A DNA stretch of 64,000 bases, from IMG/VR virus record IMGVR_UViG_3300017917_000952, positions 1 through 64,000 of that record. One strand, 5' to 3'. Below are positions 11,860 through 45,384 of the stretch, piece by piece; positions within the stretch are counted from its first letter, which is position 1, and every line of letters starts with the position of its first letter. A program made the position numbers and the translations under genes. The notes below the pieces were generated by a model, which was not told the origin of the DNA, did not search any database, and was given only the letters and a program-made list of their open reading frames with translations.

Positions 11860-11862
11860 ATT

Positions 11863-18011: not shown

Positions 18012-18034
18012 TTAACTATTGTAGAGGAGCAAAA

Positions 18035-18794: not shown

Positions 18795-18800
18795 GTAGGT

Positions 18801-19028
18801 ATGATTTTCACAGAACATAAAAGCCAAGTACACTCAATTCGTCAAGACGATCCAGAGTTTAAGATCGTAGACGGCTTTGCCGTACACCCCCGAGCAATGG
18901 TACATATTTTACCAGAATGTCCCTGGGAACTTAGAGACCAAATTAATTTTGCCATTGCCAAGGGCTATCTAAAATTGGTCGCCAACATTACGGAGCGTGA
19001 ACGTATTTTTATGGGCCTGACAAAATGA
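18801..19028 (+). CDS. Hypothetical protein
   Basis: 75-aa ORF directly after the promoter, ATGA-coupled to the next gene. Confidence 0.65.
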   Translation: MIFTEHKSQVHSIRQDDPEFKIVDGFAVHPRAMVHILPECPWELRDQINFAIAKGYLKLVANITERERIFMGLTK

Positions 19029-19879
19029 TATTAAATATGCCAGGGACAGCCGGAAGTGCAAAGATTACTATGAGACCACTATTAACAGAAAAAAAATTAG
19101 GCATTATTGGATTAGGATTCGTCGGAGGTGCAATTAAAGCATCACTTGACTGGGGTGACGAAATTTGGGTTGTTATTGATCCTGCTAAAGGATTTAATGC
19201 AACCTATCAAGAACTAGCAGAAAAAACAGACGGCGTGTTTGTCTGTGTGCCTACTCCTATGGGAGATGACGGCGTCTGCGATACCAGTTATTTAGAAGAT
19301 GTTCTTAAAAATCTAAAGTCTGTGAACTATGAAGGCGTTATTATCAGCAAATGTACAGCACCTCCTTCTGTTTACGAACGGTTAAACAAGGATCATCCCA
19401 ACCTTGTACATGCACCAGAATTTTTAACTGCCGCAAACGCAAACAGAGACTACGTTAATGGGCAATTTGCAATCATTGGCGGTCGAGTGAATGCCTACAT
19501 CCGAGAAGCAGAACGCATTATTAAAATTACTCAAACTAATTTAAAAGATGTTATGCACTGCACCATTGGCGAAGCCGCATTAGCAAAATATACTATCAAT
19601 AGTTTCCTGGCTACCAAAGTTGCGTTTATGAACGAAGTTTATGAAATTGCACAGGCAGCAAACATGGACTATGATAAGATCGCGCATATGGTAACTTTAG
19701 ATCCTCGCATTGGACGCACCCACATGCAGGTCCCAGGACCCGACGGGCAGTTTGGGTTTGGCGGGGCCTGTTTTCCTAAGGATACCAGTGCATTGCTGAA
19801 ATATGCAGAAAGTCTAAACCAAACACCTATGGTATTAGATGCCGCTGTGAAAAAGAATACCCTACTACGCTTAAAGTGA
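19025..19879 (+). CDS. UDP-glucose/GDP-mannose dehydrogenase family protein (short form)
   Basis: GLGFVG, VCVPTP, PEFL, AKYTINSFLATKVAFMNE, GFGGACFPKD; lacks the C-terminal UDP-binding domain. Confidence 0.88.
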   Translation: MILNMPGTAGSAKITMRPLLTEKKLGIIGLGFVGGAIKASLDWGDEIWVVIDPAKGFNATYQELAEKTDGVFVCVPTPMGDDGVCDTSYLEDVLKNLKSVNYEGVIISKCTAPPSVYERLNKDHPNLVHAPEFLTAANANRDYVNGQFAIIGGRVNAYIREAERIIKITQTNLKDVMHCTIGEAALAKYTINSFLATKVAFMNEVYEIAQAANMDYDKIAHMVTLDPRIGRTHMQVPGPDGQFGFGGACFPKDTSALLKYAESLNQTPMVLDAAVKKNTLLRLK

Positions 19880-19884
19880 GAAAT

Positions 19885-20145
19885 ATGGAAAAAGAAATCC
19901 TTGATGAAGTTATTCGTTTAGTTGGAAAGATTAAAAAAGATCTTCCAAAAGAAAAAATTGTACCAACTGCTGAATTTGTTAAAGATTTAGAATTTGACAG
20001 TCTGGATATTACAGAACTTGTTATCGATCTTGAAGACGAGTTTCATTTCGACTTAGCAGAAAAGAACGCTAAGGGCGTGGTTACAATTCAAGATTTGGTT
20101 AATACAATTCTAAAATTAGTTGACAAATCTAAAGTTAGTAACTAA
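19885..20145 (+). CDS. acpP: Acyl carrier protein
   Basis: DLEFDSLDITELVIDLEDEF with the phosphopantetheine Ser, and TIQDLV. Confidence 0.88.
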   Translation: MEKEILDEVIRLVGKIKKDLPKEKIVPTAEFVKDLEFDSLDITELVIDLEDEFHFDLAEKNAKGVVTIQDLVNTILKLVDKSKVSN

Positions 20146-20148
20146 AAT
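20120..20148 (+). promoter_or_regulatory. Sigma70-like promoter for folE-guaC
   Basis: TTGACA-17-TAAAAT. Confidence 0.7.
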
Positions 20149-20190
20149 TATTACGGCAATCCTCTGCCTTAACATCGGAGAACAAAAATA

Positions 20191-20937
20191 ATGACAGATA
20201 AGAAAGAAACGGCACTAGATGCCATGGCCGGAGACGGCGGATACGAAGAAGCGTACCTCGGCGACCATCTTCGCTTTAAAATGAAACGTGATAAAAAACG
20301 TTTTTGGGCCGGAGATAACATCAGCGATTATCTCAAAGAGGGAGACAAAGAACGTCTAATCGACGAAGCAACAGAAGCATTTGAACTAGTGCTCGATCGG
20401 TTGCTGATTGATCGAGAAGACGATCCTAACAGCAAAGGTACAGCCCGCAGGCTTGCTAAAATGTACTTTAACGAAATAATGGCAGGAAGATATGACCCAG
20501 CACCAGACGCAACCAGTTTCCCAAACGACTCGGCGGACCGTTACGAAGGTATGCTTGTTGTTCGCAGTGAGCTTCGCAGTATGTGTAGCCATCATCACCA
20601 ACCTGTGGTTGGCGTTGCTTATATTGGTATTATTGCCGCTCAACATCTTATTGGCCTATCGAAATATACAAGAATCGCCCAGTGGTGTGCCCGACGTGGT
20701 ACTCTCCAGGAGGAGTTGGCTAATGACATTGCTAGGGAAATCGCCAAAGCAACAGGAGCCAAGGACCTAGGTGTGTATATTCAAGCCACGCATGGGTGCT
20801 GTGAGAATCGCGGCATTATGGCACACTCTAGTCTAACACAGACCACAGTGTTAAAGGGTGCGTTTAGAGACGACATGGGCACAAAGAAAGAATTCTTTGA
20901 CAACATTAAAATGCAACAGGAATTTTCTCCGCGATGA
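20191..20937 (+). CDS. folE: GTP cyclohydrolase I
   Basis: [31 protein letters not shown]. Confidence 0.93.
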
Positions 20938-21953
20938 GAATCGAAGACGAAATTAAATTAGACTTTAAGGATGTGTTAATTCGTCCTAAGCGCAGTACAT
21001 TGTCTAGCCGTAAAGAAGTTGATCTAAAAAGAACTTATAGATTCAAACATAGCGGATCTAACTGGACTGGTATTCCTATTATGGCTGCAAACATGGACGG
21101 AGTCGGAACCATTGCTGTGGCTAAAGAACTCTATGAATATCGATTGTTTACATGTCTAACAAAGTCGTACACTGAAGATCAGTTTGAAGATCTAGTAGAC
21201 GAAGTTGGCGGAAATTACTTTGCTGTAAGTACTGGTACAAGCGACAGTGATTTTCAAAGATTGAATAGAATTATCAACGCTTATCCGGAGATACATTTTA
21301 TTTGCATCGACGTGGCTAACGGATATCAAGAACGATTTGGCGACTATGTTGCAAAAGTTCGACAGACTTTCCCGCACTGTACTATCATTGCAGGAAATGT
21401 TGTTACAGCAGATATGACACAGGAGTTAATTTTACGTGGTGCTGATATTGTTAAAGTGGGTATTGGCCCTGGTAGTGTTTGTACTACTCGTATTCAAACT
21501 GGTGTGGGTTATCCGCAACTCTCCGCGATCATTGAGTGTGCAGATGCGGCCCATGGTTTGGGTGGTCATATTATCGCTGATGGTGGATGCACTTGTCCTG
21601 GCGATGTTGCTAAGGCTTTTGGTGCAGGTGCGGACTTTGTTATGCTAGGCGGTATGCTGGCAGGACACGACGAAGGTGGCGGAACTGTTGAAAACGGTAT
21701 GGTTACTTTCTACGGTATGAGTTCAGATACCGCTATGGAAAAACATCACGGCGGTGTTGCCGAATATCGCAGTAGCGAAGGAAGAACTGTGACTATTCCA
21801 TACAAAGGCGCTATTAAAAATACAGTTCTAGATATTCTAGGCGGCTTAAGAAGTACCTGTACCTACGTCGGTGCTTCTACACTTAAACAATTAAGTAAGT
21901 GTACCACATTTATTAGGGTTAATCGTCAAATTAATGACGTCTTTCTAAAATAA
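20934..21953 (+). CDS. guaC: GMP reductase
   Basis: [57 protein letters not shown]. Confidence 0.95.
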
Positions 21954-22014: not shown

Positions 22015-22734
22015 ATGAAAAAACCAAAGCTCAATATTCCTAACAGACAACAGTTTGCACAGCGTCCTACAGCACAGCCTGCTCCTGCACCTCAGGCTGG
22101 AGGCAAACCTCCTAGCGTTATGATCGCCGTTCCTGCAATGGAAATGGTTAACGCAGAATTTGCACAACATCTAGCAATGGCCGCAGCCAATATGGTTGCA
22201 CACGGCATTCGAATCAATTGTGCTTTTAATATCGGTAGTGTTATTACTATTGCTCGACGCAATCTTGTCGAAATCTTTTTAAAGAGCGATTTTGATTATA
22301 TGTTCTGGGTCGATAGCGATATGAAGTTTCCTATCGATGCCCCTGTTCGATTACTGCAACGAAACAAAGATATTGTAGGTTGTAACTACCGTCGTCGTCG
22401 TTTCCCTAACCCTAACTTCACAGGAATGATGGGTACCAGCGGAAACTTCACTGAATTCCAAACTACGGACAATAGTCCCGCAATGGAAAAGATCGACGTT
22501 CTTCCACATGGACTTGTAATGGTTAAACGACATGTCTATGAAACTATTCCTCACCCGCATTATCTACAGGAATTCTTACCAGAGAAAAACTTAGAAATCG
22601 GTGAAGATATCTACTTCTGTCAGCAGGCATACAAGGCAGGCTTTGAAGTATGGTGTGACCAGGAACTTAGCCGAGAAATAGCACATATTGGTATTTTCCA
22701 CTACAACTATAATCTCAGTGTTCCTAAATCTTAA
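22015..22734 (+). CDS. GT-A fold glycosyltransferase-like protein
   Basis: ARRNLV, FWVDSD (DxD), DIVG, GEDIYFC, IAHIG. Confidence 0.7.
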   Translation: MKKPKLNIPNRQQFAQRPTAQPAPAPQAGGKPPSVMIAVPAMEMVNAEFAQHLAMAAANMVAHGIRINCAFNIGSVITIARRNLVEIFLKSDFDYMFWVDSDMKFPIDAPVRLLQRNKDIVGCNYRRRRFPNPNFTGMMGTSGNFTEFQTTDNSPAMEKIDVLPHGLVMVKRHVYETIPHPHYLQEFLPEKNLEIGEDIYFCQQAYKAGFEVWCDQELSREIAHIGIFHYNYNLSVPKS

Positions 22735-24656: not shown

Positions 24657-25349
24657 ATGGTTGATACTACATATGATTCAGTTTCTTATAGATCTGCAGG
24701 CGAGATCAACACCGCAATGGGCAGAGTCTATGCTAACATGGGTCTCGCAGTTCTTACATCTATGCTGATTAGTTATTTGGTAGGTAGTAGTCCTGCACTG
24801 TTGGCATTCTTTTTTACAGGTTTCCTAAAGTGGGTTGTAATTTTTGCACCACTAGTTGCTGTATTTGGAATTGGATTTGTTCTAGAAAACGAGAAACTAC
24901 CCAAATCGGTTTATCATTTATGTCTACACGGGTTTGCTGGACTGATGGGCCTAAGTTTTGCAACAATCTTTGCCGTTTTCCAAATGGGTAGCATTGTTAG
25001 TGCCTTCGTAGGAGCAGGAGTTCTATTTGGGGTAATGAGCTTTTACGGGTACTTTACCAAAAAAAGTCTAGATAGTTTAGGAAAATGGTTACTTGTTGGC
25101 TTGATTTCTATCGTGATTGCTAGTATAATTAACTTGTTCGTTGGTAGTTCTGTATTTCAAATGGTTATTTCGACATTAGCCATTGTAATTTTTACAGCAC
25201 TAACAGCATATGATACACAACAGATTAGGGAAGAATTAAGCGTTAGTACCAGCGAGGCTGCAGAAGTCCGTGGCGCTCTAAGATTGTACTTAGACTTTAT
25301 TAACCTATTCATCCATCTTTTACAACTTTTTGGTAGTAAGAAAGAATAA
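24657..25349 (+). CDS. yccA: Bax inhibitor-1/YccA family membrane protein
   Basis: About 7 hydrophobic segments, YGYFTKKSL, AYDTQQIR, ALRLYLDFINLF. Confidence 0.9.
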   Translation: MVDTTYDSVSYRSAGEINTAMGRVYANMGLAVLTSMLISYLVGSSPALLAFFFTGFLKWVVIFAPLVAVFGIGFVLENEKLPKSVYHLCLHGFAGLMGLSFATIFAVFQMGSIVSAFVGAGVLFGVMSFYGYFTKKSLDSLGKWLLVGLISIVIASIINLFVGSSVFQMVISTLAIVIFTALTAYDTQQIREELSVSTSEAAEVRGALRLYLDFINLFIHLLQLFGSKKE

Positions 25350-32258: not shown

Positions 32259-32765
32259 ATGGCAAATCTACAACCAATCACATACAAATGGACTAGTACT
32301 AAGGAATATGTTGATGCATTTCCTTGTGCTTATCGTCAATGGCGTGCTGATTCTCACTGTAATCTAATTCACGGTTACAGTTTTTCAATGAAGTTCTATT
32401 TTGGAACCAACGACTTAGACGTTCGTAACTGGGCTGCTGACTACGGTGGTCTAAAAGAACTTAAAAAACAACTAGAAGCTCAATTCGATCATACATTGAT
32501 TGTAGCACAAGACGATCCAGAAATGGAAACATTCAAATTGCTACAAGAAAAGAATATGGCCAAGATCGTAGTTCTACCTCGCCTAGGCTGTGAAGGTCTA
32601 GCCGACATGCTTTACAAGTATGTTAACGGTGTTTATATCCCCGAAATGTGGGGGCCAGGAGAAGCAGAACGTCTCTGGTGCTATCGTGTAGAAGTCCGCG
32701 AAACACAGGCTAACATGGCTTTCCGTGAAGGTCATCGTGAGTGGAATGAGGACCTGTTTGCATGA
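32259..32765 (+). CDS. queD: 6-pyruvoyl-tetrahydropterin synthase / QueD family
   Basis: HCNLIHGYS zinc His motif, DYGGLK, FDHTL, VEVRET. Confidence 0.88.
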   Translation: MANLQPITYKWTSTKEYVDAFPCAYRQWRADSHCNLIHGYSFSMKFYFGTNDLDVRNWAADYGGLKELKKQLEAQFDHTLIVAQDDPEMETFKLLQEKNMAKIVVLPRLGCEGLADMLYKYVNGVYIPEMWGPGEAERLWCYRVEVRETQANMAFREGHREWNEDLFA

Positions 32766-33094
32766 GATTGAATATCAATGACGTGGGCGGAGAGGTTGTT
32801 AAAGACAACGAGACCTATGTTCTCAAAGACAATAAAACTTTGAAGAATCTAGTTCTAAGCTCTACAGATCTAAAACCCGGACAGCAGACTAGAGGACACT
32901 CACATCCCGGTCAAGAAGAAGTCTACCATTTTATCTCCGGAAAGGGTTCTATACAGATCGACAATGATTTGTACAATGCGTCTGCCGGAGATATTTTCCT
33001 AATTCCGGATGGTGCATTTCATAAAGTCTTTAACGGATCAGAATCTGAAAATCTGTACTTTATCTGCGTATTTGATGGAAAGAGAAATCACTAA
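32762..33094 (+). CDS. Cupin-domain protein
   Basis: GHSHPGQEEVYHFISGKG and IPDGAFHKVFN. Confidence 0.88.
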   Translation: MRLNINDVGGEVVKDNETYVLKDNKTLKNLVLSSTDLKPGQQTRGHSHPGQEEVYHFISGKGSIQIDNDLYNASAGDIFLIPDGAFHKVFNGSESENLYFICVFDGKRNH

Positions 33095-33717
33095 TGTTAG
33101 AAACTATCTGCGAAACATTAGTCGAAGCATACCGCCGCAATTGGATTACCAGTCGCGACGGTAATGTTAGCATACGACACCACGATCGCGATCACTTTTA
33201 CATTACACCAAGCGGTGTACGTAAGCAGACAATGCAGCCCGATCAGTTTAAGAAGATTGGAATTGACGGGAATAATTGGGTAGACTTACCATATACTGAT
33301 ATCAGTTCTAATCTTAAGCCTAGCGGAGAAATTCCACTACACTTTGGCCTACAAAAGAATATGGGACAACACAGCAACGATGTTCGTGTAGTAGTACACC
33401 TGCATCCTACTTACTGTGTTGCGGCTATGCACGCCGGTATCGAATTAGGTTCCATTGCAAAGCAGTTCCCAGAACTTAGTCGTTATACCAAGGTAGCCTA
33501 CAATGTAGGTGATGTTCCTCCTATCAGTCAAGAACTGGCAGATCAGTGTCATCATCATCTTGAGTTAGACGATCGGGGCAATATCGCATACGATATCGTT
33601 GGTATCAAAGGGCACGGTGTTGTAGCCATTGACACTAGCCCCTGGCGTGCTTTTGAACACATCGAACGTCTGGAACATATCTGTAAAATTGTGCTTTCAA
33701 GTAAGGGGCATCAATGA
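33094..33717 (+). CDS. Class II aldolase/adducin family protein
   Basis: DGNVS, TPSG, PSGEIPLH, VHLHP, GHG. Confidence 0.88.
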   Translation: MLETICETLVEAYRRNWITSRDGNVSIRHHDRDHFYITPSGVRKQTMQPDQFKKIGIDGNNWVDLPYTDISSNLKPSGEIPLHFGLQKNMGQHSNDVRVVVHLHPTYCVAAMHAGIELGSIAKQFPELSRYTKVAYNVGDVPPISQELADQCHHHLELDDRGNIAYDIVGIKGHGVVAIDTSPWRAFEHIERLEHICKIVLSSKGHQ

Positions 33718-37958: not shown

Positions 37959-38285
37959 TTTCTTAGTTGCTTTCATAGCCGCTGCCTTTTTAGGTGCGGC
38001 TTTTTTTGCGGCTGGCTTTTCTGCTTTAGGAGCACGAGGTTTGCGTGTCTTTTTAGCAGGTGCTTCCTCTGCTACAGGAGCAGGAGGAATTTCAACAACA
38101 CCGGCGCCTTCTACAACTGCAACAGGTGTAGGCTCGGGTTGAGGTGCAACATCACCAGCAGGTACAGGTGCATCAACCTTATAAGGTGCGTCAGATGTTT
38201 CTGTAACAACTGGCTCATCCTTCTTGCGGAAGAATACAAAGTAGCCAACTACGGCAATGACTAATAGTCCAATAATTAATTCCAT
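37944..38285 (-). CDS. Membrane-anchored protein with a Pro/Ala/Lys-rich histone-H1-like tail
   Basis: MELIIGLLVIAVVGYFVFF anchor; KPAAKKAAPKKAAAMKATKK tail; AAGGA RBS and GTAAATA upstream on the minus strand. Confidence 0.7.
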   Translation of the reverse strand: MELIIGLLVIAVVGYFVFFRKKDEPVVTETSDAPYKVDAPVPAGDVAPQPEPTPVAVVEGAGVVEIPPAPVAEEAPAKKTRKPRAPKAEKPAAKKAAPKKAAAMKATKKSKKA

Positions 38286-38418
38286 GATATGGATTCCTTT
38301 ACGTAAATTGTGATTATATTTACTATTCACTAAATATCTATGAAACAAAAAATGGAGGGCAATCTAACCATATTAAGTAGGTAGATATCTACCAAAAATT
38401 TTTATTTGGAGTAACATA

Positions 38419-38643
38419 ATGCCCAACAGCATCCAATCTACAGATGTACTCATCGACGAGTACGAAGAAACAAACGAAGACGCCACAGAAGATTTTACCT
38501 TTGTTCTACATTCAGACGGTAGTTTAAAATCATTTTCTGTACCACAACATCTAATGGATGAGATTCCCGAAGAAGTTCAACTAATACTAGGGCTTTTTGG
38601 AATAGAAGATATACACCAACTTAACGATAGAACTATCCATTGA
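38419..38643 (+). CDS. Hypothetical acidic protein
   Basis: GGAG RBS, 74 aa. Confidence 0.65.
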   Translation: MPNSIQSTDVLIDEYEETNEDATEDFTFVLHSDGSLKSFSVPQHLMDEIPEEVQLILGLFGIEDIHQLNDRTIH

Positions 38644-38694
38644 CTTCAGTAAAACCACTTTTTGGTAAATACACTACAAAGTGGTTTATTGAGG
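38644..38694 (+). promoter_or_regulatory. Stem-loop with GTAAATA in the loop and the GAGG RBS in the 3' arm, upstream of the giant fibre gene
   Basis: AAACCACTTT (38652-61) pairs with AAAGTGGTTT (38678-87); the stem extends as CTTCAG/TTGAGG. Confidence 0.65.
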
Positions 38695-38701
38695 AAAATC
38701 A

Positions 38702-41700
38702 ATGTCTTTACAACTAATTAATTTAGGAGAAGGTGCGAACAGCGGCACCGGGGATAGCATCCTAACTGCGTTTCAAAAGGTAAACGATAACTTCGTTCAA
38801 ATTTACGGAACCGTAAATCCTTCGGAACTAAACTATGATGCCCTGGCTTCTATAATTTTAAACAACACATCGAGCTTTGTCTCACTGTTTTCTAGTCTCG
38901 GAATTACCGCAGATAATGTAAATTACGATTCCTTATTAGATCTACTTGAACTAAATTCCTCTACATTCGCAACATTTTTATCCGGGTTAGGCATTACCGG
39001 CACAACAATTTCTACTGCAACCTCTTTGAGTTCTGGACAATTAACACAGGTCCAGGGATTAATTGCAACTAGCACAGGTAGTATTGCCTTAAGATTTAAC
39101 CAGTTAGAAACCACATTTAACAATTCGTTAACCAACCTCAATAATGCAATTAATACCAAGGCTAGCATAAGCGACGTTAGCATTGCGATCAGTAACAGTA
39201 CAGCAAGTCTAGCCACACGAATCAGTGGACTACAAACCAACTTTACTCAACTACAAGGTTCATTAACTAACTTAACATCTGTTGTTAACACTAAGGCCAG
39301 CATCACTGATGTTCAGACCGCTGTAAGCAATAGCACAGCAAGTTTGGCAACAAGAATTAGTGGCCTACAAACTAACTTTACTCAATTACAAGGCTCGTTA
39401 ACTAACCTAACCTCTGTAATTAACAGTAAGGCCAGTATCACTGATGTGCAGACCGCTATCAGTAATGCAACCGCTAGTATTGCAATTAGAGTCAGTGGAC
39501 TCGAAACAAATTATACCAACGTCAACAATAGTTTAACCAACGTCGGTAACTGGATTAATATTGGTAGCAATGCTGCTATCGTAAATCTACAAAGTGCTAT
39601 CAGTAATAGCACAGCAAGTATTGCCACACAGATCAGTGGATTACAAACTAATTTTACACAAATACAAGGCTCATTAACTGGATTAACTTCAGTTATCAAC
39701 AGCAAAGCCAGCATTTCGGACGTACAAACTGCTATCAGTAATGCGACCGCAAGTATCGCAACTCGTGTTACAGGTCTTGAAACTAATTTCAGTGCTGTCA
39801 ACAACAGTTTAACCAATGTCGGCGTATGGGCCAACTTGACCAGCAACGCTGCGATTACCAATTTACAAACTGCAATTAGCAATAGCACAGCAAGTATTGC
39901 CACTCAGATCAGTGGGCTACAGACTAATTTCAATGCAGTCAGTAACAGCCTAACAAACGCAGGAACCTGGATTAATCTAACCAGCAACGCTGCGATTACC
40001 AATTTACAAAGTGCTATCAGTAATAGCACAGCAAGTATCGCCACACAGGTTAGTGGACTACAGACAAACTTCACCCAACTCGAAGGATCGTTAACTGGCC
40101 TAACATCTGTTGTTAACAGCAAGGCCAACATTACAGATGTTCAAACTGCTATCAGTAATGCGACTGCAAGTATCGCAACTCGAGTTAGCGGACTAGAAAC
40201 AAACTATACAAACGTATCTAACAGTCTAACTAATGCAGGCAGTTGGATCGATATCGGTAGCAACGCTGCTATCACCAATTTACAAAATTCTATTAGTAGT
40301 AGTACAGGTAGTTTTGCCACACAGATTAGTGGATTACAGACCAACTTCACCCAGCTCGAAGGGTCTCTAACAGGATTAACCTCTGTCGTTAACAGCAAGG
40401 CTAACATTACAGATGTTCAAACTGCTATCAGCAACGCAACCGCAAGTATTGCAACTAGGGTATCTGGTCTAGAGACCAATTACACCAGTGTTGATAACAG
40501 TCTAACTAATGCAGGAAATTGGATTAACTTAACTAGCAATGCTGCAATTACCAATTTACAAAATTCTATTAGTAGTAGTACAGGTAGTTTTGCTACACAG
40601 ATTAGTGGATTACAGACTAACTTTACTCAGTTAGAAGGATCTCTAACAGGATTAACTTCTGTTGTCAGTACTAAGGCCAGCATAACAGATGTTCAAACTG
40701 CTATCAGCAATAGCACAGCAAGTTTGGCGTCAAGGACATCTAGCCTAGAGACTAACTTTACAAATGTTAATAACAGTTTGACCAACGTCGGCGATTGGGC
40801 TAATATCAGTACCAACGCTGCAATTACAAACCTACAAACTGCAATCAGCAATAGTACTGGTAGTTTGGCAACACAGGTAAGCGGCCTACAGACCCAATAT
40901 AATGACCTGGCTAATTCTGTTACTACGTTCTCGACTTACACTCAAGAAGTTATCAGCATCAGCAACAGTTTTACCAGTGTTCTAACCAGTATCAACAATC
41001 TGCAGACTGCGTTTAATACGTTATCGACCGGTACAGGTGCAACTGTAGAATATGTTGACACCGCAATTAGTAATAGCACAGGTAGTTTTGCTAGTACGCT
41101 GAATACTCTTCAGACTAACTTTAATACCGTACAGAACACACTGACTAATATTAACAATAGTCTAACAAACATTGGCAATTGGTCGAATCTTGCTAACAAT
41201 TCTGCAATTACAGGTATTAACAACAGTTTGACCAATGTTGGCACATGGGCAGATATTCAAAACAACCTTGCTATTTTAGGCATTAACAACAGTTTAACCA
41301 ATGTCGGTAACTGGGTCAATTTAAGTAGCAATGCTGCGATTACAAACCTACAAACTGCAATCAGCAACAGTACTGGTAGTTTAGCCAGCAGTGTTAACGC
41401 TTTACAGACAAGTTTCAGTTCACAACAGAGCACAATTAATGACCTAAACAATACATTAACCAATGTTAATAACAGTCTAACTAATTTGAATAATAGTTTG
41501 ACTAATGTAGCAACATGGGTCAATTTAAGTAGCAATGCTGCGATCACAAACCTACAAACTGCAATCAGCAACAGCACCGCAAGTATCGCATCAACTGTTA
41601 ACACACTACAGACAAACTATACCAGCCAACAGACTACTATTAATGCAATTAATAACACCCTGACAAACGTTAATAACAGTCTAACTAATTTGAATAATAG

Positions 41701-44700
41701 TTTGACTAACGTAGCAACATGGGTTAACCTCAGTAGTAATGCTGCGATTACTAATTTACAGAACGCGATTAGTGCAAGCACAGGTAGTTTGGCTACAACT
41801 GTTAACACCCTACAGACTAACTTCTCAACCCAACAGGGAACCATTACTGGTCTTCAAGGTAGTTTAACCAATGTTCTAAATACTCTAACTGACATCAACA
41901 ACAGTTTGACCAACGTTGGTACCTGGGCTAACCTATCGACCAATGCTGCTATTACTAATCTGCAGACTTCTATTAGTAACAGCACAGGCAGTTTAGCATC
42001 TTCTGTTAATACACTACAGACAAATTATAACAGTCAACAGGCAACAATAACCAATATCAACAACAGTTTGACCAACGTTGGTACCTGGGCTAACCTATCG
42101 ACCAATGCTGCTATTACTAATCTGCAGACTGCAATCAGCAATAGCACTGGTAGTTTGGCTACCAGAACTTCTGCCCTTGAAACAAACTTTACAAATGTTA
42201 ACAACAGTTTAACCACGGTTGGTACTTGGGCTAACTTGAGTAATAACGCTGCGATCACAAACTTACAGACTGCTATCAGTAACAGCACCGCAAGTTTAGC
42301 CAGCAGTGTAAGCACTCTACAGACAAACTTCACAAGTCAACAGAGCTCGTTAACCAATATCAACAATAGTTTGACTAACGTGGGCGCATGGACTGGTATT
42401 AACGGCTCTATTACAAACATTAACAACAGTTTAACTAACGTCGGTTCGTGGGCTAACTTGAGCACCAACGCTGCAATTACTAACCTACAGACTGCTATCA
42501 GTAATAGCACTGCAAGTTTAGCGACAAGAGTAACTGGTCTTGAAACTAGTGCAACTTCTTTCAACGGGTCTATTGTAAACATCAACAACAGTCTAACTGG
42601 TATTGTAAGTTTAACAACTACCAAGGCTTCTATTAGTTACGTTGATACAGCAATTAGCAATAGTACTGCGAGCCTTGCAACAAGCGTAAGTACCCTACAG
42701 ACAAATTATACAAGTCAGCAGAGTTCGTTAACTAATATCAACAATAGTTTAACCAACGTTGGTAACTGGGCTAACTTGAGCAATAATGCTGCAATTACGA
42801 ACCTACAGACTGCAATTAGTAACAGTACTGCAAGTTTGGCCAGCAGTGTGAGCACACTACAGACTCAGTATACAAATCAACAGAGCTCGTTGACTAATAT
42901 CAACAATAGTTTAACCAACGTTGGTAACTGGGCTAACCTGAGCAATAATGCTGCAATCACAAACCTACAGACTGCAATTAGTAACAGTACTGCAAGTTTG
43001 GCAACAAGAACATCAAGTCTAGAAACTAACTTTACTAACTTGAACAGTTCGTTGACCAACGTGGGCGTATGGACTGGTATTAACAACAGCCTAACATCCA
43101 TTGTTAACCTAACTACAACTAAGGCTACGATCAGTTACGTTGACAATGCGGTAAGTGGCAGCACTTCGAGTTTAGCATCTAGTGTAAGTACCTTACAGAC
43201 AAACTATACAAATCAACAGACTTCTATTACCAACATCAGTGGTAGTTTAACTAACATTGTCAGTAACATTGCAACCAATTATGCAACTATTACTACAATG
43301 AACACTGCTATCAGTAATAGTACTGCGAGCTTGGCATCTAGAGCATCTACTCTAGAAACAAACTATACTAACCTGAATAGTTCGTTAACCAACGTAGGTG
43401 TATGGACTGGTATTAATAATAGTTTAACATCTATTGTTGCCATAACAACTTCTAAGGCCACGATCAGTTACGTCGATACTGCTGTAAGCAATAGCACTGC
43501 TTCTTTTGCAACCAGAATCAGCAATATCGAAACTGTTAATACTAACCAAGCGAACTCGTTAACCAACGTGGGCGTATGGAGTGGTATCAACAACAGTTTA
43601 ACATCTATTGTTTCGCTAACTACAACCAAGGCAAGTATCAGTTATGTTGACACTGCTGTAAGCAATAGCACCGGTAGTTTTGCAACTCGTGTTTCAAATA
43701 TTGAAAGTAGTGCAACAACATTTAACACTGCTATTGGTAATATCAATAACTCTTTAACAAACTTTAATACTTCCTTGAATACCAAGGCAAGTATTACCTA
43801 TGTGGACACTGCTGTAAGTAACAGCACTGCGTCTTTTGCTACTCGAGTTACAAACATCGAAACTGTTAATACTAACCAAGCCAGTTCTCTAACTAACTTC
43901 GGTAATAGTTTAACTAACGTAGGTGTTTGGACTGGTATTAACAACAGTTTAACATCTATTGTTGCTCTAACTACAACCAAGGCAAGTATCAGTTATGTTG
44001 ACACTGCTGTAAGCAATAGCACCGGCAGTTTTGCTACTCGTATCAGTAACATCGAAACTGTTAATACTAACCAAGCGAACTCGTTAACCAACGTGGGTGT
44101 TTGGACCGGTATTAATAACTCGTTGACTTCGATTGTTGCAATAACAACAACAAAGGCTACCATCAGTTATGTTGACACTGCTGTAAGTAATAGCACAGGA
44201 TCGTTTGCTACTCGTATTAGCAATATTGAAACAGTTAATACTAATCAGGCAAGTTCGTTAACCAACATCAATAACACCCTAGGTACCAAGGCATCTATTA
44301 CCTATGTTGATACTGCTGTAAGTAGTAGTACCGCTAGCCTGGCAACCAGTGTTCAAACACTAACCAGCAACTACAATGGTCTAAGTGCTACAATCCAAAC
44401 ACAGCAAAGTACTATTAACGGATTAACTGCTACCTATAGTGTAACTGTTAATAGCAACGGTGCAGTAAGCGGATTTAAGTTAAACAGCAACGGAACAACA
44501 TCTTCGTTTATTGTTCAAGCCGACCAGTTTAAGATTTACACATCAACCGGCGCGGCCGCACCGTTCAGTGTAAGCGGTAATACTGTCACAATGTCTAACG
44601 TAAACATCACCGGTGGTGTTAGTGCTAGTGCTATTCAGGCTGGTACCATTAGCGTCGGAGTTAAGATTCAATCTTCAGACGGTAAATTCGTCATTGACTT

Positions 44701-44731
44701 TGCTAATAAATACATCCAAATTAGTGTCTAA
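38702..44731 (+). CDS. 2009-aa repeat-rich tail fibre with a C-terminal gpJ/DUF1983-like segment
   Basis: N-terminal LINLGEGANSGTGDSILTAFQKVNDNF fibre-anchor motif; dozens of 45/47-aa repeats; C-terminal TYSVTVNSNGAVSGF...FIVQADQFKI resembles lambda J DUF1983. Confidence 0.85.
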   Translation: MSLQLINLGEGANSGTGDSILTAFQKVNDNFVQIYGTVNPSELNYDALASIILNNTSSFVSLFSSLGITADNVNYDSLLDLLELNSSTFATFLSGLGITGTTISTATSLSSGQLTQVQGLIATSTGSIALRFNQLETTFNNSLTNLNNAINTKASISDVSIAISNSTASLATRISGLQTNFTQLQGSLTNLTSVVNTKASITDVQTAVSNSTASLATRISGLQTNFTQLQGSLTNLTSVINSKASITDVQTAISNATASIAIRVSGLETNYTNVNNSLTNVGNWINIGSNAAIVNLQSAISNSTASIATQISGLQTNFTQIQGSLTGLTSVINSKASISDVQTAISNATASIATRVTGLETNFSAVNNSLTNVGVWANLTSNAAITNLQTAISNSTASIATQISGLQTNFNAVSNSLTNAGTWINLTSNAAITNLQSAISNSTASIATQVSGLQTNFTQLEGSLTGLTSVVNSKANITDVQTAISNATASIATRVSGLETNYTNVSNSLTNAGSWIDIGSNAAITNLQNSISSSTGSFATQISGLQTNFTQLEGSLTGLTSVVNSKANITDVQTAISNATASIATRVSGLETNYTSVDNSLTNAGNWINLTSNAAITNLQNSISSSTGSFATQISGLQTNFTQLEGSLTGLTSVVSTKASITDVQTAISNSTASLASRTSSLETNFTNVNNSLTNVGDWANISTNAAITNLQTAISNSTGSLATQVSGLQTQYNDLANSVTTFSTYTQEVISISNSFTSVLTSINNLQTAFNTLSTGTGATVEYVDTAISNSTGSFASTLNTLQTNFNTVQNTLTNINNSLTNIGNWSNLANNSAITGINNSLTNVGTWADIQNNLAILGINNSLTNVGNWVNLSSNAAITNLQTAISNSTGSLASSVNALQTSFSSQQSTINDLNNTLTNVNNSLTNLNNSLTNVATWVNLSSNAAITNLQTAISNSTASIASTVNTLQTNYTSQQTTINAINNTLTNVNNSLTNLNNSLTNVATWVNLSSNAAITNLQNAISASTGSLATTVNTLQTNFSTQQGTITGLQGSLTNVLNTLTDINNSLTNVGTWANLSTNAAITNLQTSISNSTGSLASSVNTLQTNYNSQQATITNINNSLTNVGTWANLSTNAAITNLQTAISNSTGSLATRTSALETNFTNVNNSLTTVGTWANLSNNAAITNLQTAISNSTASLASSVSTLQTNFTSQQSSLTNINNSLTNVGAWTGINGSITNINNSLTNVGSWANLSTNAAITNLQTAISNSTASLATRVTGLETSATSFNGSIVNINNSLTGIVSLTTTKASISYVDTAISNSTASLATSVSTLQTNYTSQQSSLTNINNSLTNVGNWANLSNNAAITNLQTAISNSTASLASSVSTLQTQYTNQQSSLTNINNSLTNVGNWANLSNNAAITNLQTAISNSTASLATRTSSLETNFTNLNSSLTNVGVWTGINNSLTSIVNLTTTKATISYVDNAVSGSTSSLASSVSTLQTNYTNQQTSITNISGSLTNIVSNIATNYATITTMNTAISNSTASLASRASTLETNYTNLNSSLTNVGVWTGINNSLTSIVAITTSKATISYVDTAVSNSTASFATRISNIETVNTNQANSLTNVGVWSGINNSLTSIVSLTTTKASISYVDTAVSNSTGSFATRVSNIESSATTFNTAIGNINNSLTNFNTSLNTKASITYVDTAVSNSTASFATRVTNIETVNTNQASSLTNFGNSLTNVGVWTGINNSLTSIVALTTTKASISYVDTAVSNSTGSFATRISNIETVNTNQANSLTNVGVWTGINNSLTSIVAITTTKATISYVDTAVSNSTGSFATRISNIETVNTNQASSLTNINNTLGTKASITYVDTAVSSSTASLATSVQTLTSNYNGLSATIQTQQSTINGLTATYSVTVNSNGAVSGFKLNSNGTTSSFIVQADQFKIYTSTGAAAPFSVSGNTVTMSNVNITGGVSASAIQAGTISVGVKIQSSDGKFVIDFANKYIQISV
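39120..44400 (+). repeat. Coding tandem repeat array (135/141-nt units)
   Basis: Recurring AISNSTAS(L/I)A..SGL(Q/E)TN(F/Y)T..NNSLTN units; 135-nt spacing checked at 39191 and 39326; boundaries approximate. Confidence 0.85.
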
Positions 44732-44742: not shown

Positions 44743-45384
44743 ATGTTCGGAATCGAAATACCAACTATAATCAGAGATGCCTGTGCCGCTAACGGTAATC
44801 AGGGTTATCTTGTAAACAACTTCGGAAAGATAGGGTTTTCACCAACTTTTACCGAAAACAAGACCGTGGCCATTATCAAAACTAATCACAACGATATGTC
44901 TATACCAGATGACATTCGTGCAGAGATGAACGAAAGAAATTTAATTTACACTATCATCGGAGAAAACAAAGATAACAGTAAAAGTTACCTTCCAGATAGA
45001 TATCTAGAAAAAGTTGGTTACGAAAATAGACTTTACATCTATGGAGTAAATGATTGCTACACGTTGTTAAGAGATTATTTCAGAGACAAGTACAACGCCT
45101 ACTTACCGTCAAACATTGACCGATCTTTCGGATGGTGGTTTATGGGACAAAGTTTGTATGTAGACAACTACTCCGAGTTCGGATTTAAAGAGACTAAAGA
45201 CTTTATTCGAAAAGACGATGTCCTATTGTTTAAATTTGAATCTGGTACTCCTAGCCATACTGCTATCTATATGGGCGACGGAATGATGTTGCACCACATG
45301 TTAGGTCGCTTCAGTTGTATAGAGCCCTACGACGGTACCTATAAAATGAACTTAGTTGGGGTCTTTAGGCATGGGTCAGTCTAA
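44743..45384 (+). CDS. NlpC/P60 tail assembly protein (lambda gpK-like)
   Basis: YGVNDCYTLLRDYF (catalytic Cys), SHTAIYMGDGMMLHH. Confidence 0.85.
   Translation: MFGIEIPTIIRDACAANGNQGYLVNNFGKIGFSPTFTENKTVAIIKTNHNDMSIPDDIRAEMNERNLIYTIIGENKDNSKSYLPDRYLEKVGYENRLYIYGVNDCYTLLRDYFRDKYNAYLPSNIDRSFGWWFMGQSLYVDNYSEFGFKETKDFIRKDDVLLFKFESGTPSHTAIYMGDGMMLHHMLGRFSCIEPYDGTYKMNLVGVFRHGSV

What the first reader, a model, noticed from the sequence alone, without database searches (positions are those of the whole stretch)
38702..44731. Giant Asn/Ser/Thr fibre saturated with N-glycosylation sequons
Seen: about 1750 residues of two interleaved repeat types (45 aa ending TKASITDVQT; 47 aa containing VG.W.NL..NAAITNLQT). 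By eye there is no Cys or His, only two Pro, and very few charged residues. Nearly every unit carries several N-X-S/T sites (NST, NAT, NFT, NYT, NNS, NLS), and some are in the extended E-T-N-(F/Y)-T form. If mostly helical at 1.5 A per residue, the shaft could approach 250 nm. Known: HMW1C-type cytoplasmic enzymes glycosylate N-X-S/T in adhesins. Inference: an extremely long, uncharged fibre that needs glycosylation or hydroxylation for solubility or for crossing capsule or S-layer, and a plausible target for the late modification enzymes. Caveat: N/S/T richness yields sequons by chance.
Basis: partly seen in the sequence, partly recalled or inferred. Interest (0 to 1): 0.78.

Follow-up and report, generated by a model that had tools for sequence, protein, structure and literature searches.

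The report
Giant uncharged coiled-coil phage tail fibre
This is a real 2009-residue tail fibre gene of an uncultured freshwater jumbo phage, built as a very long, almost charge-free coiled coil between a T4-type baseplate anchor and a lambda-J-type fibre tip; its many N-X-S/T "glycosylation sites" are simply what its Asn/Ser/Thr-rich composition gives by chance.

Summary
The ORF (38702-44731, +) is real: 2009 aa, 48% Asn+Ser+Thr, no Cys or His, two Pro, 4.6% charged residues. About 1750 residues are repeats, in 32 units anchored on A(I/V)SNST. The strict 45/47-aa alternation covers only residues 162-713.

There are 106 N-X-S/T sequons against 99.2 +/- 7.7 in composition-preserving shuffles (observed/expected 1.07). 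Relatives pool at 0.98. No GT41/HMW1C or OST gene was found in the part of the genome examined.

What it is:
- The N-terminal ~45 residues are homologous to the T4 gp10/gp9 baseplate-docking N-terminus (family profile against T4 gp10, E 8e-13).
- The C-terminus is a Pfam PF09327 "tail tip fibre" module (37.8 bits, cutoff 22; family profile against solved J-type and F-pyocin fibres, E 1e-18 to 1e-20), followed by a conserved 39-aa cap.
- The shaft has 3/4 hydrophobic spacing interrupted by hendecads, hexads and nonads. These are the registers that form beta-layers in alpha/beta coiled coils. About 47 candidate layers and a length of roughly 250 nm are predicted.

Relatives with the same two ends run from 411 to 2042 aa. 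This is an extreme-length variant of a known kind of fibre, of moderate interest.

The parts
38702..44731 (+). Giant fibre gene, 2009 codons plus stop
   Evidence: ORF list and translation. A GAGG Shine-Dalgarno lies 8 nt upstream of the ATG.
38702..38836 (+). N-terminal anchor motif (residues 1-45, MSLQLINLGEGANSGTGDSILTAFQKVNDNFVQIY...), T4 gp10/gp9-like
   Evidence: A profile of 29 such N-termini (alignment A3) hits T4 gp10 residues 2-47 at E 8.2e-13 and gp9 at E 2.1e-6. Pfam PF07880 scores 19.4 bits for this protein alone, below the cutoff of 25. 57% identical over 35 aa to the 'baseplate wedge subunit' of Methylophilales phage Melnitz.
38837..39088 (+). Non-repeat N-terminal region (residues 46-129), short predicted helices
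   Evidence: Residues 1-140 align with P0001 at 49% identity. The AF2 model is low-confidence and helical.
39089..40840 (+). Proximal shaft (residues 130-713): regular alternation of 45-aa units (hendecad, heptads, hexad VNT|KAS|I) and 47-aa units (extra nonad LTN|VGx|WxN followed by hexad LST|NAA|I)
   Evidence: Unit table; hydrophobic gap spectrum; Fourier peak near 3.4-3.55 residues, 6.2 against 0.73 +/- 0.25 shuffled; DNA repeats 76-81% identical.
40841..41062 (+). Non-repeat 'landmark' unit 13 (residues 714-787, ...TYTQEVISISNSFTSV...STGTGATVEYVDT), a candidate hinge or knee
   Evidence: 62% identical to P0001 residues 538-611, so it is orthologous rather than a repeat copy.
41063..44314 (+). 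Distal shaft (residues 788-1871): irregular units of 45-98 aa with NNSLTNx heptad inserts, NVGxW nonads and TKA(S/T)ISYVD motifs
   Evidence: DNA repeats 74-93% identical.
44390..44674 (+). Tail-tip fibre domain (about residues 1897-1991), Pfam PF09327 Phage_Tail_Tip, with the FIVQADQFKIY motif
   Evidence: PF09327 at E 1.9e-9, 37.8 bits against a cutoff of 22, when the C-terminus is scanned alone. The family profile A2 hits PDB 9ze4_N at E 2.8e-20, an F2-pyocin tail fibre at 5.5e-18 and 7z4b_EA at 6.8e-14. 1213 representative proteins share the domain.
44612..44728 (+). C-terminal 39-aa cap (GGVSASAIQAGTISVGVKIQSSDGKFVIDFANKYIQISV)
   Evidence: 72% identical to the last 39 aa of P0001 although about 1050 aa are inserted before it there. 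Also present in P0008, P0009 and P0023.
38419..38643 (+). Context: 74-aa acidic ORF directly upstream, function unknown
   Evidence: 69% identical and syntenic in L001. No family hit.
44743..45384 (+). Context: NlpC/P60 peptidase starting 11 nt downstream (lambda gpK-like 'minor tail protein' family)
   Evidence: PF00877 at E 9.8e-10; phrog_30 at 1.3e-38; same position in L001.

Best explanation
The gene encodes a homotrimeric tail fibre of an uncultured freshwater jumbo phage, probably a myovirus. The contig is 206,751 bp.

Shown by homology:
- The first ~45 residues belong to the T4 gp10/gp9 N-terminal family. [quoted passage not shown]
- The last ~115 residues are a PF09327 'tail tip fibre' module of the kind found in lambda-J-type central fibres and F-pyocin fibres. 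A conserved 39-aa cap follows it.

Shown by sequence statistics:
- The ~1750 residues between are a continuous 3/4-spaced hydrophobic pattern, i.e. a coiled coil.
- Each unit is broken by one hendecad (ISNSTASLxxx), by hexads (VNT|KAS|I and LST|NAA|I) and by nonads (LTN|VGx|WxN).

Inferred:
- The hexads and nonads form beta-layers, as in alpha/beta coiled coils, giving about 47 layers. Each would rotate the downstream helices by about 120 degrees.
- The shaft is about 250 nm long, with a possible knee at residues 714-787.
- Six trimers sit on the baseplate rim, as gp9 and gp10 do in T4.
- The fibre widens the capture radius in dilute water and makes the first, reversible contact with the host through its tip or through proteins docked there. 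That contact is passed to the baseplate through the gp9/gp10-like joint.
- Asn, Ser, Thr and Gln replace the usual salt-bridging residues on the helix surface. The high sequon count is a by-product of that composition and of repeat amplification, not a glycosylation signal.
For: - ORF and composition.
- N-terminus: the A3 profile hits T4 gp10 residues 2-47 at E 8.2e-13, a gp10 homologue of another phage at 2.2e-9, a 'baseplate wedge tail fiber connector' at 1.7e-7 and gp9 at 2.1e-6. The Melnitz intermediate passes the Pfam PF07880 cutoff. The role of the gp9 N-terminus in binding gp7 is from PMC3004832.
- C-terminus: PF09327 at 37.8 bits against a cutoff of 22. The A2 profile hits solved J-type and F-pyocin fibres at E 1e-9 to 1e-20. 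tblastn hits are annotated 'central tail fiber J' or 'host specificity protein'.
- Shaft: hydrophobic gaps of 3 (171 against 68 shuffled), 4 (137 against 50) and 7 (52 against 19), none of 5 (0 against 36) and none above 8. There are 28 gaps of 6, nearly all in x(S/T)(K/N)A(S/A)I contexts, and 22 N(V/A)GxW nonads.
- The registers match the rules a-b-c-b1-b2-b3-e-f-g and e-f-g/c-b1-b2-b3-e-f-g and the consensus [aliphatic]-A-T-K-[polar]-[DE] of PMC4786415. That paper also lists a prophage tail fibre (2C3F...AATKAYVDKAIS...) resembling the TKATISYVDTAVS motif here.
- The low-confidence AF2 monomer is helical, with breaks at TKAS 152-155, NTK 196-198 and SNAA 289-292.
- Family: P0009 (411 aa) and P0001 (2042 aa) share both ends with very different middles.
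- Synteny with an NlpC/P60 gene and a Peptidase_S74 tail fibre gene is conserved in L001.
- Myovirus or jumbo affinity: a 395-aa protein has homologues in PA5oct, Cr30 and phiN3.
- Sequons are at expectation.
Against: - No trimer model or experimental structure exists. AF2 on a monomer gave pLDDT 42 for the N-terminal part and 68.6 for the tip.
- Foldseek and VIA-align found no significant structural match.
- The window protein alone is below the Pfam cutoff for PF07880 (19.4 against 25). Only about 35-45 residues of the gp9/gp10 family are present; the gp9/gp10 beta domains are absent.
- No baseplate wedge, sheath or tube gene was identified in the 73 kb examined, so the myovirus assignment is indirect.
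- The beta2 position of the TKA-type hexad is Asn rather than the small hydrophobic residue preferred in known beta-layers.
- In the distal units the TKA motif sits in a 7-residue gap (LTTTKASI), which could be a plain heptad.
- Logan contigs of four metagenomes break inside the gene, so the exact number and order of repeats is not independently confirmed.
- The receptor and host are unknown.
Confidence: 0.75

Rival explanations
1. The fibre is a substrate for cytoplasmic N-glycosylation (HMW1C/NGT type) or another modification by phage 'late modification enzymes', and needs this for solubility or to cross a capsule or S-layer.
For: - The absolute sequon density is high: 5.3 per 100 aa, 106 sites.
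- Eleven sites fit D/E-x-N-x-S/T against 2.75 expected.
- The window carries a GT-A (GT2/Anp1-like) glycosyltransferase and nucleotide-sugar enzymes: UDP-glucose dehydrogenase, an epimerase/dehydratase, a cytidylyltransferase, a carbamoyltransferase and an FkbM methyltransferase.
- Virion glycosylation exists in mycobacteriophages (Freeman et al. 2023, as cited in PMC12619734).
Against: - Sequon observed/expected is 1.07 (z 0.88). It is 1.02 in P0001 and 0.98 pooled over the fetched proteins, so there is no selection for sequons.
- The extended sequons are copies of one repeat column.
- Sequon columns are lost in 5 and 13 of 32 units.
- In the proposed register the Thr of the conserved N-S-T anchor lies in a core position (hendecad e).
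- No GT41 or OST family hit among the ORFs scanned.
- The only other ORFs of 600 aa or more within 73 kb are an Ig-repeat protein, a ClpA-like ATPase and an unknown 1316-aa protein.
- The PglB route is periplasmic.
- Much of the enzyme set fits DNA or nucleotide modification: FolE, QueD, Vut_1 and an IMPDH/GMP-reductase-like protein.
Confidence: 0.07
2. The shaft is not a coiled coil but a beta-structured fibre (triple beta-helix or beta-spiral), as in many Asn/Ser/Thr/Gly-rich phage fibres. It would then be much shorter or differently shaped.
For: - Asn/Ser/Thr-rich repeats in phage fibres are often beta-structured (general knowledge).
- The AF2 confidence for the helical model is low (pLDDT 42).
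- The G-x-W and TKA motifs are predicted beta elements even in the favoured model.
Against: - The hydrophobic spacing is 3/4/7 with no gap of 5 and none above 8.
- The Fourier peak is near 3.4-3.6 residues.
- Gly is only 5.1% and the shaft has no Pro.
- All weak Pfam and Atlas look-alikes are coiled-coil families.
- The AF2 secondary structure is helical.
Confidence: 0.08
3. The protein is another long helical virion component: a tape measure protein, or a head or neck whisker like T4 fibritin. It would then not be a baseplate fibre.
For: - Length and helicity fit.
- There is a weak phrog_167 'tape measure' hit at E 0.0017.
- No baseplate genes were identified beside it.
Against: - The N-terminus is of the gp10/gp9 baseplate family.
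- The C-terminus is a tail-tip fibre domain.
- The neighbours are an NlpC/P60 tail-type peptidase and a Peptidase_S74 tail fibre.
- Short relatives of 411-700 aa with the same ends are far too short for tape measures.
- The tape-measure hit is at the level of coiled-coil noise.
Confidence: 0.04
4. The extreme length is partly an assembly artefact: repeats were mis-joined or over-expanded in a short-read metagenome assembly.
For: - Logan contigs of all four runs break repeatedly inside the gene, and 10 of 34 pieces in the best run fit two places.
- No record spans the gene.
- Two low-depth alternative joints were seen in other samples.
Against: - The DNA repeats are only 74-93% identical.
- In the best run all 34 pieces are at least 99% identical to the window. 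Depth is 112-126 over most of the gene, though one bin falls to 91 and about a dozen bins rise to 160-234.
- The frame stays open for 6 kb.
- An independent homologue of 2042 aa exists on another assembly.
- Pieces 90-100% identical occur in at least 3 other studies.
Confidence: 0.12

Closest known systems
Bacteriophage T4 gp10 and gp9 (baseplate wedge proteins; Pfam PF07880 T4_gp9_10_N)
   Same: The first ~45 residues carry the same motif (x-I-N-I-G-x-x-x-N-D-G-T-G-D-x-x-R-x-x-x-x-K-x-N-x-N-F-x-E-L-Y). The family profile hits gp10 at E 8e-13 and gp9 at 2e-6. In T4 these trimers sit at the wedge periphery and carry the short and long fibres.
   Different: Only the N-terminal motif is shared. 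The gp9/gp10 beta-sandwich (XD) domains are absent. Here the anchor is fused directly to a fibre instead of acting as an adaptor for separate fibre proteins. The window protein alone scores below the Pfam cutoff.
Lambda-J-type central tail fibres and the F2-pyocin tail fibre (Pfam PF09327 Phage_Tail_Tip; PDB 9ze4_N, 25vf_A, 7z4b_EA, 8jvm_F)
   Same: The distal module (coiled coil, then ...NGL.A.Y.V....NG.v.Gf.l......S.F.v.AD.F.I...) is homologous.
   Different: There are no J-type N-terminal tip-attachment or hub domains. The fibre is predicted to be peripheral (six per baseplate) rather than the single central fibre of a siphovirus. Only about 70 residues follow the domain, so there is no large receptor-binding domain, unlike P0001 with about 1050 aa there.
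Alpha/beta coiled coils: Thermosinus Tcar0761 (14 MATKDDIAN nonads), Actinobacillus OMP100, and the S. pyogenes prophage tail fibre HylP1 (2C3F) (PMC4786415)
   Same: Hexad and nonad interruptions of a heptad pattern, with the motifs V-N-T-K-A-S and L-T-N-V-G-x-W-x-N. Two layers in hexad spacing occur in the 47-aa unit, as in 2C3F. The TKA..YVD..A(I/V)S motif is shared with HylP1.
   Different: The array here is much larger, about 47 candidate layers spread over 1750 residues. The surface is almost uncharged. The beta2 residue is often Asn, Ser or Gly. No structure is available.
Stalks of trimeric autotransporter adhesins (e.g. Hia, SadA)
   Same: Long trimeric coiled coils rich in Asn, Thr and Ser, with non-heptad periodicities and beta-layer connectors (PMC4786415).
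   Different: There is no autotransporter anchor, head or neck domain, and no homology was detected. The Hia hit in Foldseek was not significant.
HMW1 adhesin with the HMW1C N-glycosyltransferase (GT41)
   Same: Both are long extracellular adhesive proteins with many N-X-S/T sites.
   Different: There is no sequon enrichment over composition, no GT41 gene was found, and there is no homology.

Membership tests
T4 gp9/gp10 N-terminal family (PF07880) | Sequence match to the family at the extreme N-terminus | tested here: met
   A profile of 29 homologous N-termini, including this one, hits T4 gp10 residues 2-47 at E 8.2e-13 and gp9 residues 7-62 at E 2.1e-6. The match starts at residue 3-4.
T4 gp9/gp10 N-terminal family (PF07880) | Pfam gathering score reached by this protein on its own | tested here: not met
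   19.4 bits against a cutoff of 25, E 0.0012, covering profile positions 2-36 of 175. The Melnitz relative reaches 25.7 bits.
T4 gp9/gp10 N-terminal family (PF07880) | gp9/gp10 middle beta-sandwich (XD) domains after the N-terminal motif | tested here: not met
   Only profile positions 2-36 match. Residues 46-160 are predicted helical. The protein is therefore a fusion that uses the anchor motif, not a gp9 or gp10 orthologue.
T4 gp9/gp10 N-terminal family (PF07880) | Binds a gp7-like wedge protein at the baseplate periphery as a trimer | not testable with these tools
   No gp7-like gene was identified in the 73 kb read. This needs cryo-EM or pull-downs.
PF09327 Phage_Tail_Tip (J-type tail tip fibre module) | Pfam gathering score | tested here: met
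   37.8 bits against a cutoff of 22, E 1.9e-9, for residues 1827-2009 scanned alone. 28 of 35 aligned relatives also match. The hit was not reported in the whole-protein scan.
PF09327 Phage_Tail_Tip (J-type tail tip fibre module) | Homology to solved J-type fibre structures | tested here: met
   The A2 profile hits 9ze4_N at 2.8e-20, 25vf_A at 5.5e-18, 7z4b_EA at 6.8e-14, 9l9p_S at 4e-10, 23gd_D at 6.9e-9 and 8jvm_F at 1.7e-3.
PF09327 Phage_Tail_Tip (J-type tail tip fibre module) | Same three-dimensional fold | tested here: inconclusive
   The AF2 monomer has pLDDT 68.6. The best Foldseek hit has E 3.1 and the best VIA-align Z is 2.5. A monomer of an intertwined trimer is a poor query.
Lambda gpJ orthologue (tip attachment protein J) | N-terminal tail-tip hub and FN3 domains, with position after the tape measure gene | tested here: not met
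   No such domains were found. The gene follows UvdE and a 74-aa ORF, not a tape measure gene. By contrast P0002 does sit after a tape measure gene.
Alpha/beta coiled coil (beta-layer fibres, Hartmann et al. 2016) | Heptad-based coiled-coil periodicity | tested here: met
   Gap spectrum of 3/4/7 with no gap of 5. Fourier peak of 6.2 against 0.73 +/- 0.25.
Alpha/beta coiled coil (beta-layer fibres, Hartmann et al. 2016) | Insertions of 6 or 2 residues (hexads, nonads) with beta1-3 followed by e-f-g | tested here: met
   There are 28 gaps of 6, of which 25 lie in h-x-(S/T/N)-(K/N)-(A/S)-x-I contexts, and 22 N(V/A)GxW nonads with 3-3-3 spacing. The registers follow the rules quoted.
Alpha/beta coiled coil (beta-layer fibres, Hartmann et al. 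2016) | Trimeric structure with actual beta-layers | not testable with these tools
   Only monomer prediction was available. Helix breaks at three of the predicted sites in a model of pLDDT 42 are weak support.
N-glycosylated adhesin (HMW1/HMW1C-type system) | Sequons in excess of what composition gives, or conserved as sequons | tested here: not met
   Observed/expected is 1.07, z 0.88; pooled over the fetched proteins it is 0.98. Sequon columns are lost in 5 and 13 of 32 units.
N-glycosylated adhesin (HMW1/HMW1C-type system) | A GT41/HMW1C-type (or OST-type) transferase encoded with the substrate | tested here: not met
   No such family appeared among about 60 window ORFs scanned with Pfam or PHROGs. 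The only glycosyltransferase is a 239-aa GT-A type. The remaining 134 kb of the contig and the host were not examined.
N-glycosylated adhesin (HMW1/HMW1C-type system) | Glycan actually attached to the protein | not testable with these tools
   Needs mass spectrometry of virions.

The most novel reading that the evidence does not exclude
The fibre is nevertheless decorated in the cytoplasm with sugars, O-linked on its 33% Ser/Thr or N-linked. The enzymes would be phage-encoded: the GT-A glycosyltransferase at 22015-22734 fed by the phage's own nucleotide-sugar genes. The result would be a glycan-coated fibre about 250 nm long, a case of tail-fibre glycosylation outside the mycobacteriophage capsid and tail-tube examples.
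Probability: 0.06. Interest if true: 0.75.

Novelty: new variant of a known kind. Interest (0 to 1): 0.36.

Why it matters
**What is new**
- The fibre joins a myovirus-type baseplate anchor (T4 gp10/gp9 N-terminus) directly to a siphovirus or pyocin-type fibre tip (PF09327).
- The shaft of this module family can be stretched about five-fold, from 411 to about 2000 aa, purely by repeat amplification.
- If the register analysis is right, this is by far the largest natural array of beta-layers in a coiled coil. It would also be a rare example of a coiled coil that is soluble with under 5% charged residues. That makes it useful to protein designers and to anyone modelling phage fibres.

**Ecology**
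A reach of about 250 nm would enlarge the capture radius of a freshwater jumbo phage. The phage is found in pond, estuary, wastewater and aquaculture metagenomes from several studies.

**Caution for genome scans**
Raw sequon counts in Asn/Ser/Thr-rich repeat proteins carry no information unless they are compared with composition and corrected for repeat homology.

Tried and rejected
- **Megablast of 12 kb against GenBank phages:** no match.
- **Whole-protein Pfam scan:** only scattered coiled-coil families, regarded as composition noise (HEF_HK, Baculo_PEP_C, DUF1664, EzrA and others). The real PF09327 and PF07880 signals appeared only when the ends were scanned alone.
- **phmmer of the whole protein against PDB:** one marginal hit. 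Family profiles were needed.
- **AF2 of residues 1-299 with a 2-sequence alignment:** pLDDT 42, used only for secondary-structure breaks.
- **ESM Atlas on the shaft:** only coiled-coil-like leads, all below 0.9.
- **Close relatives in IMG/VR by the C-terminus:** only the contig itself and one distant locus.
- **The look-up of encoding contigs for a window protein:** not on record, so the rest of the genome could not be walked that way. One search for related loci step reached 73 kb and showed a ClpA-like ATPase and an unknown 1316-aa protein.
- **T4 late promoter TATAAATA:** not enriched, and absent upstream of the gene.
- **TGGTAAATA, shared between the two upstream regions:** not enriched.
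- **Promoter and terminator scans:** at shuffle level.
- **Tape-measure reading:** rejected on its domain ends and on the short relatives.
- **P0001 distal 1100 aa:** no Pfam or PDB match.

Full report
**1. Observation**

The region holds one ATG ORF, 38702..44731 on the + strand, encoding 2009 aa. A GAGG ribosome-binding site lies 8 nt upstream.

Composition:
- T 17.0%, S 16.2%, N 14.9%, together 48%.
- No Cys and no His. Two Pro, at residues 40 and 1954.
- 93 charged residues (4.6%), net charge -17.

Splitting the protein at the conserved anchor A(I/V)S(N)ST gives 32 units. The remaining 20 units are 45 to 98 aa. They reuse the same sub-modules, with added 7-residue NNSLTNx heptads, and unit 13 (74 aa) is not a repeat.

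At the DNA level the repeats are 74-93% identical, so they are old enough to be assembled.

In the metagenome that best holds the sequence, all 34 contig pieces are at least 99% identical to the window. Depth is 112-126 over most of the gene. It rises to as much as 234 in bins that hold repeats, consistent with shared words (10 of the 34 pieces fit two places). Pieces 90-100% identical occur in three other studies. No record spans the gene, however, so the exact unit order is not independently verified.

**2. Sequons**

| Measure | Value |
|---|---|
| N-X(not P)-S/T sites observed | 106 |
| Expected from 2000 residue shuffles | 99.2 +/- 7.7 (z 0.88; 427 shuffles reach 106) |
| Observed/expected, this protein (analytic) | 1.07 |
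| Observed/expected, P0001 | 1.02 |
| Observed/expected, all 155 fetched proteins pooled (nearly all tip-domain relatives) | 0.98 |
| Observed/expected, median of the 131 with expectation above 5 | 0.95 |
| Observed/expected, 14 other window ORFs | 1.18 |

- The reverse pattern (S/T)-x-N is three-fold depleted, 35 against about 99. The tripeptide statistics therefore reflect the repeat consensus and not selection for sequons.
- The extended form D/E-x-N-x-S/T numbers 11 against 2.75 +/- 1.55. Eight of the 11 are copies of one column, LETN(F/Y)(T/S), which reads LQTN... in most other units.
- The Asn of the anchor is S, G or A in 5 of 32 units. The second sequon column is lost in 13 of 32 units.

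**3. The two ends identify the protein**

N-terminus:
- Residues 1-35 are 57% identical to the start of a 294-aa 'baseplate wedge subunit' of Methylophilales phage Melnitz. The same motif starts proteins at 34 other IMG/VR loci.
- Alone, the window protein scores 19.4 bits on Pfam PF07880 (T4_gp9_10_N; cutoff 25). The Melnitz protein scores 25.7 bits.
- A profile of 29 of these N-termini hits T4 gp10 residues 2-47 at E 8.2e-13, a 'baseplate wedge tail fiber connector' at 1.7e-7 and T4 gp9 at 2.1e-6.
- In T4, six gp9 trimers are the sockets of the long fibres. The gp9 N-terminal domain binds a gp7 domain and lets the fibre swivel. The N-terminal parts of gp9 and gp10 are homologous (PMC3004832).

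C-terminus:
- Scanned alone, residues 1827-2009 match Pfam PF09327 (Phage_Tail_Tip) at 37.8 bits against a cutoff of 22.
- The family profile hits solved fibres. These are 9ze4_N, a 'Tip attachment protein J central straight fiber domain' protein (2.8e-20), an F2-pyocin tail fibre (5.5e-18), 7z4b_EA, a 'putative tail tip fiber protein' (6.8e-14), two further J-like proteins, and lambda J.
- tblastn hits in GenBank phages are annotated 'central tail fiber J' or 'host specificity protein'.

**4. The shaft**

Between residues 130 and 1880, the gaps between successive strong hydrophobic residues compare with shuffles as follows:

| Gap (residues) | Observed | Shuffled mean |
|---|---|---|
| 3 | 171 | 68 |
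| 4 | 137 | 50 |
| 5 | 0 | 36 |
| 6 | 28 | 27 |
| 7 | 52 | 19 |
| above 8 | 0 | present |

The Fourier signal in the regular zone peaks near 3.4-3.55 residues, at 6.2 against 0.73 +/- 0.25. This is a continuous coiled-coil pattern.

The exceptions fall at fixed places:
- The 7-gap ISNSTAS(L/I/F), followed by a 4-gap, is a hendecad with a=I, d=S, e=T, h=L.
- The 6-gaps are V-N-T-K-A-S-I or L-(S/T)-(S/T/N)-N-A-A-I.
- The 3-3-3 runs are L-T-N-V-G-x-W-x-N-L.

These are exactly the registers that Hartmann et al. showed to form beta-layers in trimeric coiled coils. Nonads follow a-b-c-b1-b2-b3-e-f-g and hexads follow e-f-g/c-b1-b2-b3-e-f-g. The consensus is [aliphatic]-A-T-K-[polar]-[DE], and the segment after a beta-layer is rotated by about 120 degrees (PMC4786415).

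The paper's table also lists a Streptococcus prophage tail fibre (2C3F) whose motif AATKAYVDKAIS resembles the TKATISYVDTAVS of the distal units here.

By this reading:
- the 45-aa unit is a hendecad, three heptads, a hexad and a heptad;
- the 47-aa unit carries two beta-layers in hexad spacing (VGx|WxN|LST|NAA);
- the whole shaft has about 25 hexads and 22 nonads, roughly 47 candidate layers.

A low-confidence AF2 monomer (pLDDT 42) is helical throughout. Its breaks fall at TKAS 152-155, NTK 196-198 and SNAA 289-292, which are three of the predicted sites.

At 1.45-1.5 A per residue the shaft would be 254-263 nm long.

Unit 13 (residues 714-787) is 62% identical to P0001 residues 538-611. It separates the regular proximal part from the irregular distal part, so it is a candidate knee.

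**5. Family and genome context**

- In 5.8 billion proteins the only strong full-length relative is P0001: 2042 aa, E 6.9e-182, from an ENA contig with the same gene order.
- P0001 has the same N-terminal 140 aa (49% identity) and a shaft of about 750 aa. The PF09327 module follows, then about 1050 aa of beta-rich domains with no Pfam or PDB match, and finally the same last 39 aa at 72% identity.
- P0009 (411 aa) is a miniature with the same N-motif, a short Asn/Ser/Thr-rich coiled coil, the PF09327-type tip module and the same cap. P0014, P0025, P0030 and P0042 (437-700 aa) share the N-motif and the tip.
- The window protein is therefore the long-shaft, bare-tip extreme of a modular family. 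It is also the compositional extreme, with Asn+Ser+Thr at 0.48 against a maximum of 0.45 among the 155 fetched proteins.
- The window is the first 64 kb of IMGVR_UViG_3300017917_000952, which is 206,751 bp.
- The sequence occurs in pond, freshwater, estuary, wastewater and aquaculture metagenomes of several studies.
- A 395-aa protein of the window has its nearest GenBank homologues in Pseudomonas phage PA5oct, Caulobacter phage Cr30 and Sinorhizobium phage phiN3.
- The gene is preceded by an epimerase, an FkbM methyltransferase, UvdE and a conserved acidic 74-aa ORF. It is followed, 11 nt later, by an NlpC/P60 peptidase of the lambda-K-like phrog_30 family. After that come unknown ORFs, a 659-aa Ig-repeat (He_PIG) protein and a 319-aa tail fibre with a Peptidase_S74 chaperone domain.

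**6. Modification enzymes**

Scans of about 60 ORFs found the following:
- Nucleotide-sugar enzymes: UDP-glucose dehydrogenase, an epimerase/dehydratase and a cytidylyltransferase.
- Other modifying enzymes: a carbamoyltransferase, an FkbM methyltransferase, a radical SAM protein, an AMP-binding enzyme and a DAO oxidoreductase.
- 7-deazaguanine and nucleotide genes: FolE, QueD, a Vut_1-like protein (inferred from the syntenic gene of L001) and an IMPDH/GMP-reductase-like protein.
- One 239-aa GT-A glycosyltransferase (GT2/Anp1-like; Atlas score 0.98).

No GT41/HMW1C, OST/PglB or protein hydroxylase family appeared. The only other ORFs of 600 aa or more within the 73 kb read are the Ig-repeat protein, a ClpA-like ATPase and an unknown 1316-aa protein. 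The remaining 134 kb and the host genome were not examined.

**7. Mechanism (best estimate, confidence 0.75)**

Shown:
- a virion fibre with a gp10/gp9-type N-terminal anchor;
- a coiled-coil shaft with regular non-heptad insertions;
- a J-type tip module;
- no sequon excess.

Inferred:
- a homotrimer, six per baseplate, docked on a gp7-like wedge protein;
- beta-layers at the hexads and nonads;
- a length of about 250 nm with a knee;
- long-range reversible adsorption through the tip, or through proteins docked to it, with the signal passed to the baseplate through the swivelling anchor;
- a polar, uncharged surface as the solubility solution itself, with no need for glycans.

**8. Verdict**

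The glycosylation interpretation is unsupported.

The object is an extreme, compositionally unusual variant of a known kind of phage fibre. It is of moderate structural interest as a possibly record-size alpha/beta coiled coil. It is not evidence of a new modification system.

Noticed in passing
window 38640-38704: A strong RNA hairpin lies immediately upstream of the fibre start codon (-21.9 kcal/mol, z -5.6 against shuffles) and partly pairs the GAGG Shine-Dalgarno. The relative L001 has a different sequence there, sharing only TTTGGTAAATAC.
   Followed up: partly
window 38419-38643: A 74-aa, very acidic ORF directly upstream of the fibre is conserved at 69% identity in the same position in L001. 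It has no family hit. It could be an assembly factor.
   Followed up: partly
window 40841-41062 (fibre residues 714-787): A non-repeat 'landmark' unit with a TGTGAT loop is 62% identical to P0001 residues 538-611. It divides a regular proximal shaft from an irregular distal shaft and may be a hinge.
   Followed up: partly
L001 10001-16129 (P0001): The homologue has almost the same total length (2042 against 2009 aa). About 1000 aa of shaft are replaced by about 1050 aa of unannotated beta-rich distal domains, inserted between the PF09327 module and the shared 39-aa cap. Why the total length is kept is unexplained.
   Followed up: partly
window 22015-22734: A 239-aa GT-A (GT2/Anp1-like) glycosyltransferase typical of phages. 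Its substrate is unknown.
   Followed up: partly
window 16531-21953 and 32259-33717: A cluster of carbamoyltransferase, UDP-glucose dehydrogenase, GTP cyclohydrolase (FolE) and an IMPDH/GMP-reductase-like protein, plus QueD and a Vut_1-like transporter further on. This is suggestive of 7-deazaguanine or other DNA hypermodification rather than protein modification.
   Followed up: no
window 83-13293: An unusual metabolic block for a phage: an AMP-binding enzyme, a beta-keto acid cleavage enzyme (BKACE), TctC-type and DctP-type solute-binding proteins, and a radical SAM protein. The TctC/DctP types hint at a betaproteobacterial or alphaproteobacterial host.
   Followed up: no
window 24657-25349: A Bax1-I (BI-1/YccA-like) membrane protein encoded by the phage (PF01027, E 3e-50).
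   Followed up: no
window 44743-45384: An NlpC/P60 peptidase of the lambda gpK-like 'minor tail protein' PHROG lies directly after a fibre with a J-type tip. This may be a remnant of a siphovirus K-I-J-type tail-tip module inside a jumbo phage.
   Followed up: no
L043 12172-19894 (contig 64.9-72.6 kb, beyond the window): A ClpA-like ATPase (756 aa, about 41-44% identical to those of jumbo phages Atu_ph07, PA5oct and Phosso). It is followed by an unknown 1316-aa protein with weak relatives in ~190-200-kb Xanthomonas and Vibrio phages and in Stenotrophomonas and Campylobacter phages.
   Followed up: partly
window 38000-44000: GC skew turns negative (about -0.10) only across the fibre gene. This is explained by its codon content (ACN, AGC and AAC codons), not by a strand switch.
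   Followed up: partly
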